A DNA stretch of 38,893 nucleotides, from positions 64,469,547 through 64,508,439 of the forward strand of contig NC_068982.1 of the NCBI RefSeq assembly GCF_001194135.2, in the 5' to 3' direction. Below are positions 1 through 38,893 of this stretch, one piece after another; the first letter of the stretch is position 1; each line of letters starts with the position of its first letter. The DNA comes from Octopus bimaculoides. Its lineage: Eukaryota. The position numbers and the translations under genes were made by a program. The notes beneath the pieces are model-generated. The model made no database searches and had not been told where the DNA came from. It was given only the letters and a program-made list of their open reading frames with translations.

Positions 1-1306
1 GAAGTGCAGGTCGCCACTTGTGAAACGCTCTCTCTGCTGTCAAAAGCCTTTAAAGGGAGGTTTAGGGATGCCTTGGTTAATGATGTGCAGGCATGCGTTG
101 ATATTGAGGCACCTCTGGATTCTCCTGGATAGTGAACGGGTGTGGTCTGCGCTGGCCAGACAAATGTTCCCAGAGTTCAAAAGTTTTTGCGAGCAGGAAG
201 CCTGGTGTTCTCGTAGACCGAGGTCGAGTGAATGGCATAGAGTGTCGTAAGGCCCTCTTGCTTTTCCGGCGCTCGGGCAACGCCAGCGGTGGGGGTTCTA
301 CACGGATTTTATATAGTGGGTTGGTAGAGTCTGAATGCAACGATGGCCTAGGGGCGACTCTAGGTCTCGGGTTTATTCAACTGGACAGCCTGTTTCACCG
401 TACATTCGGGTTGAGAACGTTGGACAACTTCCAAAAGTCCTTNNNNNNNNNNNNNNNNNNNNNNNNNNNNNNNNNNNNNNNNNNNNNNNNNNNNNNNNNN
501 NNNNNNNNNNNNNNNNNNNNNNNNNNNNNNNNNNNNNNNNNNNNNNNNNNNNNNNNNNNNNNNNNNNNNNNNNNNNNNNNNNNNNNNNNNNNNNNNNNNN
601 NNNNNNNNNNNNNNNNNNNNNNNNNNNNNNNNNNNNNNNNNNNNNNNNNNNNNNNNNNNNNNNNNNNNNNNNNNNNNNNNNNNNNNNNNNNNNNNNNNNN
701 NNNNNNNNNNNNNNNNNNNNNNNNNNNNNNNNNNNNNNNNNNNNNNNNNNNNNNNNNNNNNNNNNNNNNNNNNNNNNNNNNNNNNNNNNNNNNNNNNNNN
801 NNNNNNNNNNNNNNNNNNNNNNNNNNNNNNNNNNNNNNNNNNNNNNNNNNNNNNNNNNNNNNNNNNNNNNNNNNNNNNNNNNNNNNNNNNNNNNNNNNNN
901 NNNNNNNNNNNNNNNNNNNNNNNNNNNNNNNNNNNNNNNNNNNNNNNNNNNNNNNNNNNNNNNNNNNNNNNNNNNNNNNNNNNNNNNNNNNNNNNNNNNN
1001 NNNNNNNNNNNNNNNNNNNNNNNNNNNNNNNNNNNNNNNNNNNNNNNNNNNGCAAGGAACCGTGTGAATAGTCAGAAAAAAAAAGAAAAAAAAAAAGGTG
1101 CCAGCGATAGATCGGGGCTTGTGGGGTCGGAGCGTGGCCTGATCATCGCTTCATTTGTGTTGTCTAACGTACTGTTAATATCATTCGATTTTTTATATTT
1201 TATAAAATTTTTAAAGTCATGTTTATGTAAACCATTCGCATTACTGATCCCAATCAGTTGTTTTGTACCATTCTATGTTTGGCCCCCTGTGGGCAATAAA
1301 GAAATT
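1..1306 (+). mobile_element. 3' part of L1/Tx1-like LINE (T1): ORF2 C-terminal region, assembly gap 443-1051, 3' UTR and tail
   Basis: 1-442 translates with one frameshift near 240 to PLVKRSLCCQKPLKGGLGMPWL...ECRKAL...LYSGLVE...LGATLG...LFHRTFG..LDNFQKS. The GGLG motif is typical of L1/Tx1 ORF2 and the text aligns with element A. The element ends in GCCCCCTGTGGGCAATAAAGAAATT (1282-1306). Confidence 0.85.
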
Positions 1307-1317
1307 GGTATTTCGTC

Positions 1318-2114
1318 ACTGTGAAGTTAATACGTGGTGATTTTGAATAGTTTTTGTGCTGCTTTGCAGCGGTTTGGGTGTTTATGTGTGTAATTTGTTT
1401 GAGCTTTCTCTTCTCGTTAGAGAAGAGACAGCTGGTTGAAGAATGTCTGAAGACAATTATAGTTACTCAGACATGTCATCATCCGAGGAGGAGTTGCTGG
1501 AGGCAGTTAAAACAATGGACCAGAAACTGATAAGAGAAGCGGAATTTTGCTGCTGTAGCAAGATGCAAGGAAACAGAAATGTATATCAGGGAATTCGGAA
1601 GACACAAAGAAGAAATGAACCGAGATGAGTTTGAAGTGAAGCTGTCACCCCCGCAAGAGGTTAAAAACGGAATAAGGGAAAGGTCGATAATCTATCGAAC
1701 CTTTTCGATAAATAAAAGAATAGACGTCGTCACGACAGAACAAATAGAAAAGGCGTTAGAGCAGATTTGGGAAGACATAATATACCTGACTAGAGGTTCA
1801 ACATTTGGAACAGTAGAAGTGAGGTTTCGTAATGCAGCAGCAGTAAGGAAACATGCAGCGTCGACAATTCGGAGCGAAGAAGGGGTGCTGTTGCCCACGT
1901 ATAGAGGCATGAGAGCAACAAGGATCACAGTCGAAGGAATCCCACCGGAGATTGATGTGACCTTGGTAGCAGATGCGGTCCTCTTTGGTAATGAGGACAA
2001 CATAGTGGTGCTCCAGGCCAAGAAAAAAAGAGTGCGTCAGCTGGAGAGGTCAATCACTGGAGATGATAGTCCAAGGTTCAAAAGAAACGATGGAAAAGAT
2101 TACGGAAACCATGT
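1318..2114 (+). mobile_element. 5' part of a second Tx1-like element (T2): 5' UTR plus frameshifted, truncated ORF1 (ATG 1443)
   Basis: ORFs 1443-1628 and 1579-2127 contain RSIIYRTF..IEKAL..RGSTFGTV..F..VLLPTYRGMR..I.VEGIPP, matching the ORF1s at 6445-6828 and 7740-8905. Cut off by a SINE at ~2115. Confidence 0.75.
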
Positions 2115-2309
2115 AACTGGTACTTAATTTATCGATCCCGAAAGAATGAAAAGCAAAGTCGACCTCGGCGGAATTTGAACTCAGAACCTAACGATAGACG
2201 AAATACTGCNNNNNNNNNNGCGGAATTTGAACTCAGAACCTAACGATAGACGAAATACTGCTAAGCATTTCGCCTGGCGTGCTAACGTTTCTGCCAGCTC
2301 GCCGCCTTT
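2115..2309 (-). mobile_element. tRNA-derived SINE, family 2 (here called SINE-2)
   Basis: Minus strand reads GGCGGCGAGCTGGCAGAAACGTTAGCAC...GCTTAGCAGTATTTCGTC...GAGTTCAAATTCCGCCGAGGTCGAC (A-box and B-box like). Homologous copies at 14412-14842 and 16339-16550. Confidence 0.8.
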
Positions 2310-3794: not shown

Positions 3795-3800
<6 letters not shown>

Positions 3801-4013
3801 TTTTATTTGTTTCAGTCATTTGACAGCAGCCATGCTGGAGCACAACCTTTAGTCGAACAAATCGACCCCAGGACTTATTCTTTGTAAGCCTAGTACTTAT
3901 TCTGTCGGTCTCTTTTGTCGAACTGCTAAGTTACGGGAACGTAAACACACCAGCATCGGTCGTCAAGCGATGGTGGGGGACAAACACAGGCACACAAACA
4001 TACACACACACAC

Positions 4014-4051
<38 letters not shown>

Positions 4052-4192
4052 GCGACGGGCTTCTTTCGATTTCCGTCTACCAAATCCACTCACAAGGCTT
4101 TGGTCGGCCCGAGGCTATAGTAAAAGACAAATGCCCAAGGTGCCACGCAGTGGGGCTGAACCCGATACTATGTGGTTAGTAAGCAAGCTACT
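3795..4192 (-). mobile_element. tRNA-derived SINE, family 1 (SINE-1), interrupted in its head by the LINE array
   Basis: Aligns with the intact copy at 24604-24776 (GACGGG..CACAAGGCTTT..CCCAAGGTGCCAC..GACTGAACC..AAGCAAGCT) but stops at AAGCAAGCTACT (4192). The head end (CCACACAGCC-like) is replaced by the LINE 3' tail. Confidence 0.85.
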
Positions 4193-4498
4193 TTATTTCA
4201 TATAATATTTACCATGAAGGCATTACAAAAAGGGGACGAACAAAGACAGACAAACATAAAAGGTGTAGTAGCTGCTATAACGTTTAAAAATTTATGATAA
4301 ATTTCTGATGCGATTTTAAAAATTACAAGTACAATTTACCGATTATATTTTACAAATTACGAATTACAAGTTGCTCATTACAAGTTACCTGTTACTCATT
4401 GCAATTTGCAATGACTTTCCTGGAGGAAAGGCATCCGACCACCAGGGTGGACCCCTTGCTTTCTCTTTTTTTTTTTTTTTTTTGCCTCCACTTATCTG

Positions 4499-6444
4499 GT
4501 GTCAAACACTCCCAGCTTCCTTGACACAGGCTTGTATCTTCTCATGAATCTATCACGTGAGAGGTACCTCTTCTCCAAGCCTGATCTTGCTACTGAAGTG
4601 GTAACTAAAAAAGTTAACCAAACCCTGGCCGGATACAAAGGTACCCGTCACTATGCCCCTTACATCCGTCTTCCATACTGTTTCTTTCAGTATGGCTACT
4701 ACGCAGAAAAAGCAAGCCATCCTTTCCCTGTTAAGGGAAGGAGGCGGTACAATCTCGATGATAGACTCAGCTGATAGCTGTACTTTGCCCATCGATGACA
4801 ACAGTTGCTATGTGAAAACTATCAGTCCCGTTAATTCCGGACATTCCACAAATGCGTGCAAGGCGGTTTCCCTGTCCTGCCCGCACCTCGGACATGTCGG
4901 CGAGACGGCACTTCCGTGCCTTGACAATTTATCACGAACAGGTAACGCCGCACGGAAGCACTGCCAGAGATTTCTTTTAATTGTCCAGATACCCCGGCCC
5001 GAAAGTTCTCCTGAAAAGGTTGATCAACTGATTTTCATCATAGCCCAGGGTCTCCCCCAAGGCATCTTCGGACATAAATCCCACTAACTCACTATAAAAA
5101 TCCGCGGTGGAACNNNNNNNNNNNNNNNNNNNNNNNNNNNNNNNNNNNNNNNNNNNNNNNNNNNNNNNNNNNNNNNNNNNNNNNNNNNCTGTCGGCACTC
5201 CAATTGCGAGTTCCCCAGCCTAGGTCTCTGCTTGATCCATCTACCGATGTCCGTTAAGGACGTCAATTCCGGAAGGTAGAACCGCACGTGCGGTGACCAC
5301 ACCTGTTCTCCATCCAGGTGAAGCAAGAGGTGCTTCAACCTTAACGCGAATTTTCGCATCCTCAGCCAAGGCATCCCTAGCCCACTCTTTAGCGGTTTCT
5401 GGCATCAGACAGAGCGCTTCACAAGTGGCTTTCCTCCCTTCCACAAAAAGCGGAAAAGGATTCTTTCCAACTTGTTCAGCCACAAATCGGGACAAGGCAC
5501 CAAGGTCAGACGGTAGGTGATAACCGATGCTTTAAAAACATCTGCACCACCTGCGCCTTTCCTAGCAAGGATAACCAGGTCTAGGTTAGAGCAGTCACCT
5601 TGCTGGTCACCTCACTCCGATTTTTCTCTATCTGGAGGCCTGGCCCGAACCAGACTCCAAGCAGCTTTACAGGACCTTCCATCCAACGCCCCACGACGTT
5701 ATTGGACGGCACCGGCTTGCCCCTCCAGGTGCCGAGTTGCAAACCGATCGACTTGTCCTTGTTAACCTTTGCTCCTGCCACCGCCTCGTAACTTTTGATA
5801 GCCTCTTCCACCACTGGAAGCTGGCACTCATCCGTCACGATGATGGAGATGTCATCCGCATACGCCGTAGCTCCTCTTCCACACCATAGATCNNNNNNNN
5901 NNNNNNNNNNNNNNNNNNNNNNNNNNNNNNNNNNNNNNNNNNNNNNNNNNNNNNNNNNNNNNNNNNNNNNNNNNNNNNNNNNNNNNNNNNNNNNNNNNNN
6001 NNNNNNNNNNNNNNNNNNNNNNNNNNNNNNNNNNNNNNNNNNNNNNNNNNNNNNNNNNNNNNNNNNNNNNNNNNNNNNNNNNNNNNNNNNNNNNNNNNNN
6101 NNNNNNNNNNNNNNNNNNNNNNNNNNNNNNNNNNNNNNNNNNNNNNNNNNNNNNNNNNNNNNNNNNNNNNNNNNNNNNNNNNNNNNNNNNNNNNNNNNNN
6201 NNNNNNNNNNNNNNNNNNNNNNNNNNNNNNNNNNNNNNNNNNNNNNNNNNNNNNNNNNNNNNNNNNNNNNNNNNNNNNNNNNNNNNNNNNNNNNNNNNNN
6301 NNNNNNNNNNNNNNNNNNNNNNTTATAGGCCTGAAGTTCCCTATTTCGTTCCCCTTGCTCGGGTCCTTTCTGATCAACGTCTGCTCATAGACTTGGGAAT
6401 TCTCCCATTCTGCAGCCAATTGGAGTAGACGCTGGCCAGCAGGC
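4499..6444 (-). pseudogene. LINE ORF2 reverse transcriptase and C-terminal zinc-binding region, disrupted
   Basis: Motifs in order: LLASVYSNWLQNGRIP, TLIRKDPSKGNEIGNFRPI, AYADDISIIV (rev. comp. of 5834-5868), PVKLLGVWFG, FLWKGGKPLVKRS, GLGMPWL, WQCFRAALPVRDKLSRHG, CPRCGQDRETALHAFVEC. Several frameshifts and stops. Confidence 0.9.
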
Positions 6445-6828
6445 TGGGAGGAGCACCACCTCCTTTGTTTTCAGGGGAGTCACTGAGTGCTCTTGGGCTT
6501 TTTCGACTGTTTCGAATTTGGCTTCTATTGTGCCATATGCCCGGCCCCTCGCTATGTTTTTTATGTCTTTCCATATAGGGGCCAGGCATTTTTCTATTTC
6601 ACACTGTTCAAAGTGTTTGAATTTATTGGATGAAGGATAGTATGTTTTAAAAACGACTGTCCTTCTTTTCAATTTTTCAACACTAGGGGAGGGTGATATC
6701 TTTATATCCCCACCTTCTTTCATTCTTCCAAAAAGCTCAGAAATCTTATCCGTTTGTATCACAATATCTTCACAGGCCACAGCGGCGACTGCCGAGAACT
6801 TCTTTGCTGGCTCATCCAGTGGTTTCAT
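6445..6828 (-). pseudogene. N-terminal half of Tx1-like ORF1
   Basis: MKPLDEP...KRRTVVFKTY..IEKCLAPIW..RGRAYGTIEAKF..KEVVLLP, homologous to the other two ORF1s. Joins RT sequence directly at ~6445. Confidence 0.75.
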
Positions 6829-6902
6829 TTTTTTATTATTTCGACCGACATACTCGGTCGAACTTAATTCTACACAAATAAATTATAAATTACAATTCCC
6901 TA

Positions 6903-7275
6903 GAAACGGGAAACCTATAATATTTTTTTTCCCTCTTAATGAGGACACCAGTTCAAATCCTACCCCCCGCTGGGGGGTGGGGTGTAGCAATAAAGCCTAC
7001 AGTGGCTGAAATTAAATTTTTCACACAGATTAAATTAAATATCCCTCAAAACGGGAAACCTATAATGTGTTTTTTCTTCTTAATGAGGACAACAGTTCAT
7101 AAATAAGGCCAACAACAGCTAAAATTAAATTTTTGGCACAGAATAAATAAAATATCCTTCAAAACGGGAAACCTATAATGTGTTTTTTTTTCTCCTCTTA
7201 ATGAGGATAACAGTTCAAATCCCACCCACGCTTGGGGGCGGGCGGGGCGCAACGCTAAAGCCTACAATGGCTTTA
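6903..7275. repeat. three imperfect tandem units (~113-145 bp) in the 5' UTR of element A
   Basis: AAACGGGAAACCTATAAT...CTTAATGAGGA..CAGTTCA recurs at ~6904, ~7049 and ~7162. Unit 2 lacks the C-run/G-run segment. Confidence 0.85.
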
Positions 7276-7506
7276 GCAAAGTTCAATTTTACAACAAATA
7301 ACAACTGCCAAAATGGCTTCACAAAAACAATTCCTGTCTCCCGTCACCGGGAAAAGCACACAAAAAAATGTTCAGTTCCACAATTCAATAAAGTTCAACA
7401 ACGATAACAACAATTCCAACAGAAAAACAATCCAATCTTCAACAAAACGTTCGACTCACCACCAAACAAAAACACGTACAACACGGAGTCCAGTAAGCAA
7501 GCTACT

Positions 7507-9363
7507 TTATTTCATCTGATTGACCATTACCGGTCTTACAAAGAGGAGTAGCTGCGGGCTGGACAATTACATCAATGAATGAAGGAAAATTAAAATGATG
7601 GAAAAAATGGGAGGAGCACCGGCGCCCGCCGACCGATAACCCCTCGAAAACATTGTTCAATTTACAAAATACAATTTACAATATATAATATACAACATTT
7701 CAACATTTTCAAATTTAACAATTACAACGTTTTTTCCCCTTAATCCTCCTTGTCCGGACCCCCAAGCAAGTTCTCTGCTGCCTGCAGGAACTCCCGCAAT
7801 GGTTGGCCCAGTAAACGTGTCTCAAAATCCTCGTATACACAGGTCGCTTTGACCTTATTAGCTTCGTCCAGACTAATAACTTCCGCAATTACCTGCGGAG
7901 GCCAGCTTGGGTGATCCATACAGGTCATATCAAATCTTCCCACCGAGAGCGTGTCATGTTCGGTCGGCGGCACAGTGACATCCACTGGCTGCCTCCCGTT
8001 TTTCTTTTTTCTCTCACTGGTTGCGGAAGTTGGGGTCTCCACTGGCACACCCAAGGGCTCCCTCTCTTCTCCCGCCACCTGCACCTCTACTGGTGAGCAA
8101 CTACCATTGCTCACTCGTCTCTTTCTATTTCTTGAGGCTGATACCTCAACGACCTCCTCCGCCTTTCCCTGCAATGGGATAGCGGAGGACACCTTCTCCT
8201 TACTCTGCTTCGGGGCTTTACCATGGCCCTTAGGGCAGTCTTTTCTTATGTGGCCTGACTCCAGGCACGAGTGACACTTGGGAGGGGGCGAACTTCCAGT
8301 ATCACTGTGTACCTGGAGCCAGCCATACATAGGAAGTCAGGGAAGTCCATCTCCCTTGCGGCCACTGGGGTCCATAGAGTCAAGGAAGCCTTTGTACCCT
8401 CCCAACTGACCGCAGGTGTCATTTGTACGTCCAAAATCTTGGGTCCACTGTCCCCCAGGCCCCTCCGGATGGCAGAAGCAATCCACCCAGGTTCAGTGCC
8501 CGGGGGCAGCCCACATATCCAGGCTTTAATCACTCTCTTCCCACAATAAGTGGGGAGAAACAAAATTTCCTCCTCTTGCAGGGGCCGACCAGCTGCAATG
8601 CTAGCATCTTCAGGGAAGTCAAACTGCAACCGTATCGTTGCATATTTGACTCCCCTGAATATGTAATATTTCTTTGCTGGCAAGCATCTTGCCAGTTCTT
8701 TTTCAATTATTTCCTTTCCGAAGAGGGCGATGGCATCACGTGACCTAGAAAAGGTTCGCAAGACCACCGTCCTCTTCTCAAGGCTTTCCACCCACTGCTT
8801 GAGCGGGACAACCTCCCACTCTACAACAGCGCTTTCACATTTTTTTGCTATGTTTGTTAAAACTAAACAGTCCACAAATGAGTCCAAAAAAGTTTTTAAA
8901 AACACAGAAACACTTTAAACGAAAGTCCAACCTAAAAAGACGAAGCAAAAATAAAAAACACAGCTCTAATAATGGAAAAGATAGACGGAAAATAAAATAA
9001 CAGTTCATACAGCAAAAACGCAGCAAATAACACAATAGTCCCGGCCTACAGGTACTCCAGGCCAACTGGAACACACAACAGGAACTTTTAAATCCACAGC
9101 AAAAATTAACACAATACAAGATACAATTAATGCAAGAGCCGCCGAGAGCAAGCGAAATTGTCCCAGAGCTAAGTACAATTTACTGAAAATAAAAATATTT
9201 AACGCACAACAAATTATACCCAGCTCAATATAACAAAATCACCTACATCGACGACACTTTGCTATTATTGTTCTTTTTTCCTTAAGTTCTTTCTAGGACG
9301 GAACTCACACAGCTCACGTCCTCACTGTTCTTCAGGAAGAAGCAACACCAACGCGCATGAGCG
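7507..9363 (-). mobile_element. ORF1-only Tx1-like element B (non-autonomous, HAL1-like architecture)
   Basis: Bounded by target copies at 7492-7506 and 9364-9377, with no N gaps. Contains 5' UTR, ORF1 and a ~230-bp 3' UTR ending ATGAAATAA; no endonuclease or RT sequence. Confidence 0.8.
7740..8905 (-). pseudogene. gag-like ORF1 with CCHC zinc knuckle, one frameshift near 8300
   Basis: 8905-8246 gives KRTVVLRTF..IEKEL..RGVKYATI..FLPTYCGKR..ICGLPP. 8330-7740 gives CHSCLESGHIRKDC (CX2CX4HX4C), a basic low-complexity tract, then a stop at 7740. Confidence 0.85.
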
Positions 9364-9377
9364 GGAAGCGAGCTACT

Positions 9378-9860
9378 TTATTTCATTTTATTTGCCATAA
9401 AGGCAGTATACAAAGTAACTGCGGGCTGGACAAACACATTAATGAGATGAGATGAATGATAAACACGATATTAATGGGAGAAGACAGAAGCCGCCCGCCG
9501 AACTCTGCCTCTCTAAAACATTGTTCTTTTATAAATTACACAAATTTACAAATTGAGGCTATAAACCTCTTACTTCACAATTTTATTTTACATTATGTCT
9601 TTGAACTGAGGCACTTGCCTCTTACACTTTTCTTTTTATGGGCCACATGACCTTTCAATATAAGGCACTCGTCCTCTTACACTTTACCGCCCGACCAGAC
9701 TCAGCGCTTCACTCAAGCAAAAAAAGTTGGCATTTCAAAACTTCAATTTCCCCCATAGCCCCCCGCCCCTAACCTCGTCATCCTTCACCTCCTTCAGAAA
9801 CCCCTCCTGGCGAAACACGTGGAAAAATACAGAGACTTTGATTGAAAGATAAAATCCTTT
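9378..9860 (-). mobile_element. 3' portion of a third array member (C), related to B; 5' boundary uncertain
   Basis: 9378-9560 parallels the 3' UTR of B (GCGGGCTGGACAA, ATGGGAG, CGCCCGCCGA, AAAACATTGTTC) and ends in the same ATGAAATAA tail against the target copy at 9364-9377. Confidence 0.65.
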
Positions 9861-10559
9861 TCAAATTTCAACTTTTCAAAAAAAGAATATATGTCTGATA
9901 GTCTGAGATGTTAAATGTCTTTGTATAACTCATTGTTTGATGAGAATTAAAATTTAATAGGAAACACAAACTTGAATACAGGAACTAAGCAAATGGTGAA
10001 AAAATATTTTACATATTAACATATTAGCTTTTCATTAAATTGTCTACAGATCTCATTTAGACAAAAGATAACTTGCAAATATCTACTACGGGCAGGCTTT
10101 AGTGACATTATCAGAACAATATGATATGGACAACAAAATGAAACTAATATTACAAACAAAGCATAAATTAATAAAACTGGAAGAAATAAAATAAAATCAA
10201 GCAAGTTAGTGATCATTTAAGCAAAGCCTAAAACATGAAAAGACAATCATGGGTATATATTAAAGCAACGAACTTCCAATCTAATATATTATATTATATC
10301 GTTTTTAACCAAAGAAATATTACATTTCCAATACTAACTTACCTGTGTAATTTGTTGAAATAAGTCTGCAACAACAAATATTGCAGAGAGACGACAGGTT
10401 TTTGCTTCATGCAACAATTATTAGTCGTAAAGGTTAGCAATTTCAAAAATTAATTACGTCTATATACTATAATGATAACTTGTGTAGTGAATAAGAATAA
10501 AGAATGCATACGTATACACGCGCGCATACACACACGTACAGATACACATACACATACGC

Positions 10560-10880
10560 ACTCATATATAGAGAGAGAGGGAGAGAGCGAGAGAGACATA
10601 CATGTATACATATATATGTAACACAAATTCACACACACACACACACACATATATGTATATATATATATATATACATTTATATATAATATATTTATATATA
10701 TATACATTTATATATAATATATCTATATATATATACATTTATATATAATATATTTATATATATATACATTTATATATATATATGTATATACATACATATC
10801 GACATATATATAATATTTATAAATAAATATATATGTATACACACACACTCTCACACACGCATACACCCACATGCATACAC
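10560..10880. repeat. compound (GA)/(CA)/(TA) microsatellite with ~30-bp AT-rich minisatellite units
   Basis: Visible directly; ATATATACATTTATATATAATATAT recurs about three times at 10665-10780. Confidence 0.9.
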
Positions 10881-11102
10881 ATATCAATGAATCTGACTAA
10901 CTCTTAAAAAGTAGTCATTGCGGTGATTAAGTGTGTAGACTTTCTACTAGTCTTCATTTTGTCTGGGATTAAATTTTCATCTCACGTACATTTATTGCAC
11001 TGTTTTATACAACGTCTGGCTAAGTAAGAGTTGTTTTGATCAATAAAATATTTCCATGGGAAAAAAAATTAATGAAACCACAAAAAGAATACATATATGA
11101 CA

Positions 11103-38472: not shown

Positions 38473-38893
38473 GTTGACTTTGCCATAGTGTCTCTATCTC
38501 TTTCTTTCTCTATATATATGTATAGAAAGTCATAATAACGGAAATTGGCATTTAAAAATTTTAAACAGAAGCGAATCTTATATTAAGTAATATTATTTAT
38601 GCCTAATATACAAATAAACTTTATAGTTTATAGTTTATAATTTTCATGGGAGTTATGGCCGTTATACATAGAATATAATTTCCAAATTTCATAAAGATCC
38701 GTTCAGTACTTTTGACGTAGTTTTGGATAAGAAAACAAATGACTAATGTGTGTGTTTGTGTGCATGTGTTTGTGTGTGATGGGTGTATATATGTATAGAT
38801 ATCTGTATGCATGTATATATATGTATATATGTGTACATATTACATGTACATCTACACATGTGTATACATATACATGTATGCATATAGATCTAT

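What the first reader, a model, noticed from the sequence alone, without database searches (positions are those of the whole stretch)
4178..9386. Head-to-tail array of Tx1-like LINEs all inserted at one site in a tRNA-derived SINE head
Seen: AGTAAGCAAGCTACTTTATTTCAT is identical at 4178-4201 and 7492-7515, with a variant GGAAGCGAGCTACTTTATTTCAT at 9364-9386. The first ~15 nt is SINE-1 head sequence between the A-box-like and B-box-like motifs (empty site at 24735-24750). The rest is the shared LINE tail. Three different elements (A, B, C) lie in the SINE's orientation, each separated only by that site. Known: Tx1-clade LINEs include sequence-specific families targeting tRNA arrays, U2 snRNA, 5S rRNA and microsatellites, and repeated use of one site gives such arrays. 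Inference: this family targets a SINE, i.e. a dispersed high-copy safe haven, and silences its Pol III promoter. I do not recall this being described for cephalopods.
Basis: partly seen in the sequence, partly recalled or inferred. Interest (0 to 1): 0.9.

Follow-up and report, generated by a model that had tools for sequence, protein, structure and literature searches.

The report
LINEs stacked in one SINE site
Three defective L1/Tx1-type retrotransposons sit head-to-tail on the minus strand, each followed by the same 13-16 bp taken from the hairpin in the head of an octopus SINE, which is the footprint of a site-specific LINE lineage; the behaviour is well known for this kind of element, and only the target (a SINE head) seems undescribed.

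Summary
The 24-mer is exact at 4178 and 7492 and has 3 mismatches at 9363 (0 expected by chance). Everything lies on the minus strand. Each LINE tail (...ATGAAATA) is followed by AAGTAGCTTGCTT(ACT), then by the SINE body in register, by the 5' end of element A, or by the 5' end of element B.

An independent Octopus sinensis locus (L008) supplies the piece missing here. A complete SINE head runs up to AAGTAGCTTGCTT and is followed directly by a B-like LINE 5' end. So the 13-16-mer is SINE sequence duplicated as a target-site duplication, not the LINE terminus.

That makes four insertions, from at least three subfamilies in two genomes, at one nucleotide position. Both assembly gaps lie inside one collinear ORF2 remnant, far from the junctions.

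Caveats:
- No genome-wide survey was possible.
- None of A, B or C carries an endonuclease.
- C is a roughly 0.2 kb fragment with no SINE head upstream.
- Tx1-clade placement was not tested by phylogeny.
- tRNA detectors do not recognise the SINE head.

Tx1 lineages that target other transposons, and tandem copies sandwiching a duplication, are published. This is a new member of a known kind.

The parts
3795..4177 (-). SINE remnant downstream of the insertion site. It comprises the body from AACCACATAG.., a B-box-like GGTTCAGCCCC (4162-4152), a central (AT)n/(TG)n-rich stretch, and the 3' half ending ..CTGAAACAAATAAAAGAAT. An (AT)n run follows.
   Evidence: 80% identity to the uninterrupted copy at 24604-24750. 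In-register alignment. Sequence read.
4178..4193 (-). Site copy 1. It reads AAGTAGCTTGCTTACT on the minus strand, which is SINE nt ~23-38, and is contiguous with the SINE body.
4194..7491 (-). Element A, a decayed and internally deleted LINE. 5' UTR 7491-6829, with 113-bp tandem repeats at 7005-7217. ORF1 remnant 6828-6445, fused at ~6443 to RT motifs 1-2 (6442-6323). Gap. RT YADD-to-thumb 5892-5189, with frameshifts and stops. Gap. zf-RVT C-terminus 5111-4559. 3' UTR 4558-4194, ending ATGAAATA. No endonuclease.
   Evidence: Translations. Pfam RVT_1 (weak, below cutoff) and zf-RVT (above cutoff). tblastn collinearity. TRF. No APE anywhere in the window.
7492..7507 (-). Site copy 2. AAGTAGCTTGCTTACT lies between the B tail and the A 5' end (GGACTCCGTG..). 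It is identical to copy 1, including the final T.
7508..9365 (-). Element B, a 1.86-kb ORF1-only LINE derivative. 5' end CCCGCTCATGCGCGTTGG.. at 9365. 5' UTR. ORF1 ~8851-7740 (RRM-like domain plus CCHC knuckle, one frameshift near 8285). 3' UTR 7739-7508, ending ATGAAATA. No ORF2.
   Evidence: ORFs. zf-CCHC 20.3 bits, just under the 20.8 cutoff. 48-57% aa identity to O. sinensis LOC115225585. 5' terminus homologous to the L008 LINE. RRM-type topology and RRM-dominated fold hits on the related P0008, weak.
9366..9378 (-). Site copy 3. AAGTAGCTCGCTT (13 nt, one T>C change) lies between the C tail and the B 5' end.
9379..9551 (-). Element C, a 5'-truncated LINE 3' end. Only the 3' UTR/tail is recognisable, at 72-74% identity to the B 3' UTR. 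The true 5' boundary is undefined, somewhere between 9551 and ~9850. No SINE head lies beyond it.
24600..24775 (-). Uninterrupted reference copy of the same SINE. Head GGCGCAGGCGTGG.., empty site AAGAAGCTTGCTTTCC at 24735-24750, B-box-like at 24719-24705.

Best explanation
The region is a stack of three independent insertions (A first, then B, then C) by a sequence-specific L1/Tx1-type LINE lineage. The lineage's target is a short hairpin, GGTAAG-TAGCTTG-CTTACC, in the head of an abundant octopus SINE. The hairpin lies between the A-box-like and B-box-like motifs.

Proposed mechanism:
1. ORF2p comes from an autonomous relative. It has an APE-type endonuclease, an RT and a CCHC finger. It is not encoded in this window.
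2. It nicks the bottom strand at 5'-..CTACTT^ACC.
3. The freed ..CTT-3'OH pairs with the ..AAG-3' end of the LINE RNA and primes reverse transcription.
4. The top strand is cut 13 nt downstream (CTT^ACC, the symmetric position in the palindrome) or 16 nt downstream.
5. Repair duplicates AAGTAGCTTGCTT(ACY) on both sides of the new copy.
6. Each insertion therefore regenerates the target at its 5' side. Later insertions land there and build a head-to-tail array with one duplication between neighbours.
7. A (endonuclease deleted) and B (ORF1 plus tail only) share the ~110-nt 3' tail. They were presumably mobilised in trans.

Shown: the junction sequences, the register with the SINE on both sides, and the reuse of the site by different subfamilies in two genomes. 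Inferred: the nick positions, priming by microhomology, trans-mobilisation, and loss of Pol III promoter function in the split SINE copy.
For: (1) Three tails are followed by the same 13-16-mer; chance expectation is 0. The tails are homologous upstream and unrelated downstream.

(2) Downstream of A, the 16-mer continues in register into the SINE body and runs to the SINE 3' end.

(3) O. sinensis L008, which per PMC13282606's reference list comes from a PacBio/Hi-C assembly: a full SINE head from nt 1 (GGCTGAGGCATGGCTGTGTGGT) plus AAGTAGCTTGCTT is followed directly by CCTGTGCATGCG.., a LINE 5' UTR and an ORF1 homologous to B. The first ~55 nt of that 5' end align with the B 5' end, which follows AAGTAGCTCGCTT in the window. 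So the 13-mer occurs upstream of a LINE 5' end with no LINE tail before it.

(4) The site copies flanking A are 16/16 identical, including a T that also occurs in the adjoining SINE body (GCTTACTAACC). That fits a local duplication.

(5) The elements are of L1 type. RT hits human L1 ORF2p at 3e-50 against R2 at 4e-24. zf-RVT is present. The full-length relatives P0010/P0011 carry PF03372+RVT_1+zf-RVT, and the Argonauta copy has an APE region.

(6) Other relatives in the same window also show target-type behaviour. D is flanked on both sides by (TAGA)n and abuts E. F is followed directly by G.

(7) Precedent: Tx1 lineages targeting Mariner, piggyBac, Harbinger and LTR elements, a 16-bp TSD, and tandem copies sandwiching a TSD (PMC4494074).
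Against: Only four insertion events were seen, and no genome-wide tabulation was possible. The scans of metagenome, prokaryote-genome and viral collections returned no octopus DNA.

No SINE head lies upstream of C in the window. An extra deletion or another history is needed to explain that.

The 3' end of the L008 element is missing, so no single element shows both junctions.

No endonuclease of this lineage was seen, so specificity is inferred from footprints only.

The 3' junction is ambiguous by the 3-nt AAG overlap.
Confidence: 0.72

Rival explanations
1. The array was not built at this locus, or was later damaged. Either a LINE stack formed inside a SINE elsewhere and was copied here as one unit (read-through transcript retrotransposed and 5'-truncated within C, or a segmental duplication), or the SINE head plus part of C was lost by a later deletion. 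Site-specific insertion would still be the origin of the stack.
For: No SINE head or A-box-like sequence lies anywhere upstream of C. C is recognisable for only ~170 nt. The SINE downstream of A runs to its natural 3' end, as a read-through RNA ending at the SINE tail would.
Against: No target-site duplication flanks the whole C-B-A-SINE block. The best shared word is 8 nt, about what chance gives. A transcript longer than 6 kb ending at a SINE tail is speculative. A simple deletion explains the same facts.
Confidence: 0.15
2. This is a loose hot spot rather than true sequence specificity. The endonuclease recognises only a short motif or a hairpin shape (for example CTT^ACC). The SINE is so abundant that repeated hits in it are expected.
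For: SINEs make up ~11.6% of the O. vulgaris genome (PMC13282606). The second-strand cut varies between 13 and 16 nt. Two of three SINE copies in the window are unoccupied.
Against: All four events share the same nucleotide for the 3' junction or the same 13-mer for the 5' junction. All have the same orientation relative to the SINE. A 6-nt motif would occur every few kb outside SINEs, yet every A/B/C-type tail seen is at this site.
Confidence: 0.08
3. The 15-16-mer belongs to the LINE's own 3' terminus, and its match to the SINE is coincidence or an old capture. The stack would then reflect LINEs inserting next to each other or end-to-end template jumping.
For: The 24-mer is the most conserved part of the three tails. 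The LINE end and the SINE overlap by AAG.
Against: In L008 the 13-mer is preceded by 22 nt of SINE head from SINE nt 1, and no LINE tail precedes it. In the window it runs in register into ~380 nt of SINE. An uninterrupted SINE carries it. Related LINE tails in the window (D, F) end in AATAAAG/AATAAAA-type sequences without it.
Confidence: 0.03
4. Assembly artefact: repeats were joined wrongly by a short-read assembler or scaffolder.
For: The window has 13 N-runs. Element A is stitched from three contigs.
Against: The B-A and C-B junctions lie within one gap-free 5.5-kb stretch. The shared exact word at the junctions is only 24 nt, with 74-80% identity around it, which is too short to mislead usual k-mer sizes. 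The RT pieces are collinear across both gaps. The same junction type occurs in an independent assembly of another species.
Confidence: 0.02

Closest known systems
Tx1-Mar families and SINEU-3 of crocodilians (Tx1 clade; Kojima 2015, PMC4494074)
   Same: LINEs insert at one position of a dispersed transposon family. The TSD is long (16 bp there, 13-16 bp here). Tandem copies sandwich one TSD. Non-autonomous passengers use the same site. There is no poly(A)-type tail.
   Different: The target there is a Mariner DNA transposon. Here it is the head of a SINE, between its A-box-like and B-box-like motifs. The passengers here are deletion derivatives of the LINE (A, B), not snRNA-headed SINEs. The host is a cephalopod.
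Tx1L in Tx1D (Xenopus laevis; Christensen et al. 2000, cited in PMC4494074)
   Same: The founding case of an APE-type LINE whose endonuclease targets a specific site inside another, non-autonomous transposon.
   Different: The target is a piggyBac-type DNA element. Endonuclease specificity was shown biochemically there. Here no endonuclease gene of the lineage was even recovered.
Small-RNA-gene and microsatellite targeting Tx1 families: Keno (U2), Mutsu (5S), Dewa (tRNA-Leu spacer), Kibi/Koshi ((TC)n/(TTC)n) (PMC3706591, PMC4494074)
   Same: Multicopy 'safe' targets. The site here lies in a Pol III-type, tRNA-like promoter region. A relative in the same window (D/E) sits in a (TAGA)n microsatellite.
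   Different: Those targets are functional gene arrays or simple repeats. Here the target is a retroposed, dispersed SINE, and a true tRNA origin of the site could not be confirmed.
R2/R1 in rDNA
   Same: Site-specific TPRT. The target is regenerated and copies can stack. 3' junctions are precise.
   Different: R2 uses a restriction-like endonuclease and belongs to another clade. RT similarity to R2 is much weaker than to L1.

Membership tests
L1 superfamily / Tx1 clade non-LTR retrotransposons | RT domain of L1 type | tested here: met
   The element A RT remnant has YADD. Its close relative P0009 hits human L1 ORF2p at E 3e-50, against R2 at 4e-24. Pfam RVT_1 on A itself is only a weak, sub-threshold hit because of decay and gaps.
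L1 superfamily / Tx1 clade non-LTR retrotransposons | APE-type endonuclease N-terminal to the RT | tested here: inconclusive
   Absent from A, B, C and the whole window. Present in relatives: PF03372 in P0010/P0011 and others, and an APE region upstream of the Argonauta ORF (L001 8597-10048). No A/B/C-type autonomous copy was recovered.
L1 superfamily / Tx1 clade non-LTR retrotransposons | C-terminal CCHC zinc finger after the RT (zf-RVT) | tested here: met
   PF13966 zf-RVT scores 37.4 bits against a 27.5 cutoff on the A C-terminus. The motif is CPRCGQDRETALHAFVEC.
L1 superfamily / Tx1 clade non-LTR retrotransposons | ORF1 with an RRM-type domain plus CCHC knuckle | tested here: inconclusive
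   CCHC scores 20.3 bits against a 20.8 cutoff in B. The AlphaFold model of the related P0008 has low confidence overall (pLDDT 46.7), but residues 23-100 (pLDDT 62-79) show beta-alpha-beta-beta-alpha-beta topology. Foldseek hits are mostly RRMs, with best E 4e-3.
L1 superfamily / Tx1 clade non-LTR retrotransposons | RT phylogeny grouping with Tx1L/Keno/Kibi rather than with L1 proper | not testable with these tools
The literature only says that L1-Tx1 families exist in octopus (PMC13282606, PMC8967140).
Sequence-specific (target-specific) LINE | Independent copies share the same flanking sequence at both junctions, with a TSD | tested here: met
   There are three 3' junctions and two 5' junctions in the window, plus one 5' junction in O. 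sinensis. All are at SINE nt ~22/23 and ~35/38. The sample is small, at four events.
Sequence-specific (target-specific) LINE | A large fraction of all genomic copies lie in the target (Kojima's working criterion: more than 20% of flanks) | not testable with these tools
   No octopus genome is searchable by DNA. Collection scans found only chance matches.
tRNA-derived SINE (SINE2) | Head recognisable as a tRNA, or carrying A and B boxes at tRNA spacing | tested here: inconclusive
   ARAGORN finds 0 genes, even on a rebuilt uninterrupted head. Rfam finds no tRNA hit at E<=10 on 24680-24800. Visible motifs are A-box-like TGGCTGTGTGG (nt 11-21; 10/11 to TRGCNNAGTGG) and B-box-like GGTTCAGCCCC (nt 54-64). 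tRNA-derived octopus SINEs are reported (Ohshima & Okada 1994, cited in PMC4758252), but identity with this family was not checked.

The most novel reading that the evidence does not exclude
Octopods carry a previously undescribed Tx1-type lineage that is strictly specific for the anticodon-arm-like hairpin of their most abundant SINE. It comprises several subfamilies plus ORF1-only and endonuclease-less passengers. Both strands would be cut at the same CTT^ACC motif, offered by the palindromic stem. If so, a LINE uses a retroposed Pol III element, present in hundreds of thousands of copies, as its safe haven and builds LINE stacks inside SINEs genome-wide.
Probability: 0.5. Interest if true: 0.55.

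Novelty: new member of a known kind. Interest (0 to 1): 0.42.

Why it matters
If the specificity holds genome-wide, it adds a SINE head to the list of targets chosen by Tx1-type LINEs. The list so far includes snRNA and 5S genes, a tRNA spacer, microsatellites, DNA transposons and LTR elements.

It would also give a simple rule for untangling nested LINE/SINE annotation in the very repeat-rich octopus genomes. Stacked LINEs separated by a 13-16-mer are sequential insertions, not new composite families.

The symmetric CTT^ACC cut sites in a hairpin give a concrete, testable model of how one endonuclease makes both nicks.

It does not change the general picture of how such elements work.

Tried and rejected
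(1) Collecting more genomic copies.
- DNA pattern scans of metagenome contigs were run with an unbiased B/C tail pattern and then a junction pattern. The first gave 0 hits. The second gave 21 hits, all chance matches in unrelated contigs.
- Scans of genome contigs gave 0 hits twice. The viral-contig scan gave 0.
- Looking up the window's own 196-aa ORF gave no record.
- The three homologue searches gave few cephalopod proteins. Only L008 (O. sinensis) and L001 (Argonauta) had usable flanks. L002, L030, L031 and L032 end before the tail. L003-L007 hold two decayed fragments joined inside coding sequence, not a tail-site-head junction.

(2) Idea that the LINE is the SINE's own partner through a shared 3' tail. 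Local alignments of the SINE 3' 110 nt against the A, B and C tails are no better than shuffles: 21-417 of 500 shuffles reach the score. Rejected.

(3) Idea that the F-type tail (..TGTGGGCAATAAAGAAAT) is shared with the second SINE family. No such tail occurs on that SINE's copies in the window. Dropped.

(4) tRNA identity of the SINE head. ARAGORN (also relaxed, on a rebuilt head) and Rfam were negative.

(5) A TSD around the whole C-B-A-SINE block. Only an 8-mer was found, at chance level.

(6) Extending C. No nucleotide or translated similarity to B or A exists beyond 9551.

(7) The Rfam 'miRNA' hits in the window are microsatellite artefacts, all far below gathering scores.

Full report
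**Observation**

The 24-mer AGTAAGCAAGCTACTTTATTTCAT occurs exactly at 4178-4201 and 7492-7515. It occurs with three mismatches at 9363-9386. None of 100 dinucleotide-preserving shuffles produced a single match. All features concerned lie on the minus strand, so sequences below are given on that strand.

Each of three LINE 3' ends reads ...ATGAAATA, followed by AAGTAGCTTGCTTACT (twice) or AAGTAGCTCGCTT-CCC (once). After that the three sequences have nothing in common:
- the first runs into a SINE body (AACCACATAG...GGTTCAGCCCC...);
- the second runs into the 5' end of element A (GGACTCCGTG...);
- the third runs into the 5' end of element B (GCTCATGCGCG...).

Upstream of the junction the three tails remain alignable for about 110 nt, at 74% mean column identity. 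They are therefore 3' ends of related but distinct LINE subfamilies.

**Assembly gaps**

This was tested first, as requested. Homologous proteins align collinearly across both N-runs.
- Across 5893-6322 (430 N), P0009 residue 293 lies at 6324 and residue 448 at 5892. About 462 nt are missing.
- Across 5114-5188 (75 N), P0001 residue 313 lies at 5189 and residue 329 at 5111. About 45 nt are missing.

Both gaps therefore sit inside one ORF2 remnant, with order and strand preserved. The frame across them cannot be judged because N lengths are estimates. The junctions lie at least 900 bp from any gap. The B-A and C-B junctions lie in one uninterrupted stretch, 6323-11826.

**What the elements are**

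Element A (4194-7491):
- It has a 5' UTR with 113-bp tandem repeats and an ORF1 remnant (6828-6445).
- The ORF1 remnant is fused at about 6443 directly to RT motifs 1-2.
- It then has an RT with YADD and several frameshifts and stops, and a C-terminal zf-RVT finger at 37.4 bits against a 27.5 cutoff.
- The second half of ORF1, the whole endonuclease and the N-terminal part of ORF2 are deleted.

Element B (7508-9365) is only 1.86 kb:
- It has a 5' UTR and an ORF1 with one frameshift and a CCHC knuckle.
- ORF1 is 48-57% identical to Octopus sinensis LOC115225585.
- It has a 3' UTR of about 230 nt and no ORF2.

Element C is recognisable only over 9379-9551.

No APE endonuclease is encoded anywhere in the window. 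Relatives do have one. Full-length ORF2 proteins P0010 and P0011 carry PF03372+RVT_1+zf-RVT. The Argonauta hians copy has an APE region upstream of its annotated ORF.

The nearest solved structures are human L1 ORF2p (E 3e-50), far ahead of R2 (4e-24).

A structure model of the ORF1 relative has low overall confidence (pLDDT 46.7). Its N-terminal 80 residues nevertheless have RRM topology, and the weak Foldseek hits are mostly RRMs.

The elements are thus L1-superfamily LINEs with Tx1-like architecture. Clade placement by phylogeny could not be done here.

**What the 13-16-mer is**

An uninterrupted copy of the same SINE lies at 24600-24775. It reads GGCGCAGGCGTGGTGACTGTCTGGG-AAGAAGCTTGCTTTCC-AACGACATGG...GGTTCAGTCC.

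The window sequence from 4193 downwards aligns with it in register, from the site to the SINE's natural 3' end.

The decisive piece comes from outside the window. In O. sinensis (L008, CM016886) a complete SINE head, GGCTGAGGCATGGCTGTGTGGT-AAGTAGCTTGCTT, is followed directly by CCTGTGCATGCGTTG.... This is the 5' UTR of a LINE whose ORF1 is the homologue of B's. The first ~55 nt of this 5' end align with the 5' end of B, which in the window follows AAGTAGCTCGCTT.

So the 13-mer occurs upstream of a LINE 5' end with SINE head, and no LINE tail, before it. It also occurs downstream of a LINE 3' end with SINE body after it. That is what a target-site duplication of SINE nt ~23-35(38) looks like. 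It excludes the reading that the 15-mer is simply the LINE's own terminus.

In total there are four insertions, from at least three subfamilies in two genomes. All use the same position and the same orientation.

**Mechanism (inferred)**

The site is a perfect hairpin, GGTAAG-TAGCTTG-CTTACC. It lies between an A-box-like motif (TGGCTGTGTGG, nt 11-21) and a B-box-like motif (GGTTCAGCCCC, nt 54-64).
- The 3' junction places the first nick on the bottom strand at ..CTACTT^ACC. A 3-nt overlap (AAG) between the LINE end and the target could serve for priming.
- The B-type 5' junctions place the second nick on the top strand at ..GCTT^ACC. This is the symmetric position of the palindrome and gives a 13-bp duplication.
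- For A the duplication is 16 bp. Both copies share a T that is also in the adjoining SINE body, which argues for a local duplication.
- Each insertion recreates the target on its 5' side, so later insertions stack head-to-tail.
- A is heavily decayed and B has only one frameshift. That fits the order A, then B, then C.
- A and B lack an endonuclease, and B also lacks an RT. They must have been moved in trans, presumably through the shared tail.
- Splitting the two promoter-like boxes by kilobases should inactivate that SINE copy. This is an inference and a by-product, not evidence of a function.

**Weak points**

(1) No SINE head lies upstream of C, and C's 5' boundary is undefined. Either a deletion removed the head, or the whole block came here by another route. 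No duplication flanks the block.

(2) No element shows both junctions. L008 has lost its 3' part.

The searchable DNA collections contain no octopus sequence. The protein-based route yielded only one informative octopus locus.

(4) The SINE head is not recognised as a tRNA by ARAGORN or Rfam.

**Context in the window**

Other relatives behave similarly.
- Fragment D (29411-28880) is flanked on both sides by (TAGA)n and abuts fragment E. This suggests a microsatellite-targeting sister lineage.
- On the plus strand, element F (tail ..GGGCAATAAAGAAAT at 1305) is followed at once by the 5' UTR and ORF1 of element G.

**Comparison with what is known**

Many Tx1-clade families are target-specific.
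- Tx1L inserts in the piggyBac-type Tx1D, Keno in U2 genes, and Kibi/Koshi in (TC)n/(TTC)n.
- Crocodilian Tx1-Mar inserts in Mariner-N4_AMi with a 16-bp duplication. Others insert in Harbinger or LTR elements.
- Tandem copies 'sandwiching a TSD' are explicitly described (PMC4494074).
- Mutsu (5S) and Dewa (tRNA-Leu spacer) are listed in PMC3706591.
- L1-Tx1 families are reported as present and recently active in octopus, without mention of targets (PMC13282606, PMC8967140).

Full-text searches found no description of a LINE lineage targeting a SINE head. Repbase notes could not be checked.

**Verdict**

The behaviour is a textbook property of this kind of LINE, so this is a new member (a new target) of a known kind. 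The genome-wide claim remains to be tested.

Noticed in passing
window 28535-29433 (minus strand): 5'-truncated LINE fragment D (29411-28880; tail ..GGCTATAATAAAAACATA) is flanked by (AGAT)5.5 upstream (29412-29433) and (TAGA)18.5 downstream (28806-28879). A second RT fragment, E (28810-28535), follows immediately. This looks like a sister lineage targeting a TAGA microsatellite, again stacked.
   Followed up: partly
window 2-2113 (plus strand): LINE F (RT 2-440, gap, 3' UTR ending GGGCAATAAAGAAAT at 1305) is followed directly by the 5' UTR and ORF1 of another LINE, G (ORF1 about 1579-2113). No recognisable SINE or microsatellite lies between them. G is cut off at 2113 by an inverted copy of a second SINE family.
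   Followed up: partly
window 4168-4196 / 24735-24755; L008 9470-9489: The target is a perfect 6-bp-stem hairpin, GGTAAG-TAGCTTG-CTTACC. The inferred first- and second-strand cuts of the B-type insertions fall at the same CTT^ACC motif on the two strands.
   Followed up: partly
window 7005-7217: The 5' UTR of element A contains 113-bp tandem repeats (1.8 copies at 88% by TRF). Self-BLAST shows a third, weaker copy from 6885.
   Followed up: no
window ~6443: In element A, ORF1 (about residue 98) is fused directly to RT motif 1. This deletes the ORF1 C-terminus, the endonuclease and the ORF2 N-terminus. B is an independent ORF1-plus-tail derivative. Non-autonomous deletion derivatives seem common in this lineage.
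   Followed up: partly
L001 12013-12660 (Argonauta hians): The Argonauta relative is followed by a ~110-nt spacer with a B-box-like GGTTCAATC. A second, 5'-truncated copy of the same 3' UTR follows, ending GGCTAATAAAGAAAT. This is another tandem arrangement in a different octopod.
   Followed up: no
P0004 (protein hit), L032, L002, L031: Cephalopod-type LINE ORF2 fragments turn up in records labelled as a bacterial MAG ('Herbaspirillum sp.' zinc-binding domain-containing protein) and in several metagenome assemblies. L032 is 79% identical in DNA to element A. This is probably host-DNA contamination of those data sets.
   Followed up: no
L003-L007 (Logan, SRR11869384-94): The same ~3.7-kb contig, holding two decayed LINE fragments joined inside coding sequence, was assembled from five separate sequencing runs. 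It may be a transcribed locus.
   Followed up: no
window 2115-2308, 14427-14862, 16340-16549: Copies of a second, unrelated SINE family are present (..GGTTCTGAGTTCAAATTCCGCCGAGGTCGAC..). They include two adjacent direct copies at 14427-14643 and 14653-14862.
   Followed up: no
window, many sites (e.g. 21745-21963, 38801-38889): All Rfam matches at E<=1 are 'miRNA'-family hits on (TG)n/(TA)n-type microsatellites, far below gathering scores. They are artefacts of simple sequence.
   Followed up: yes
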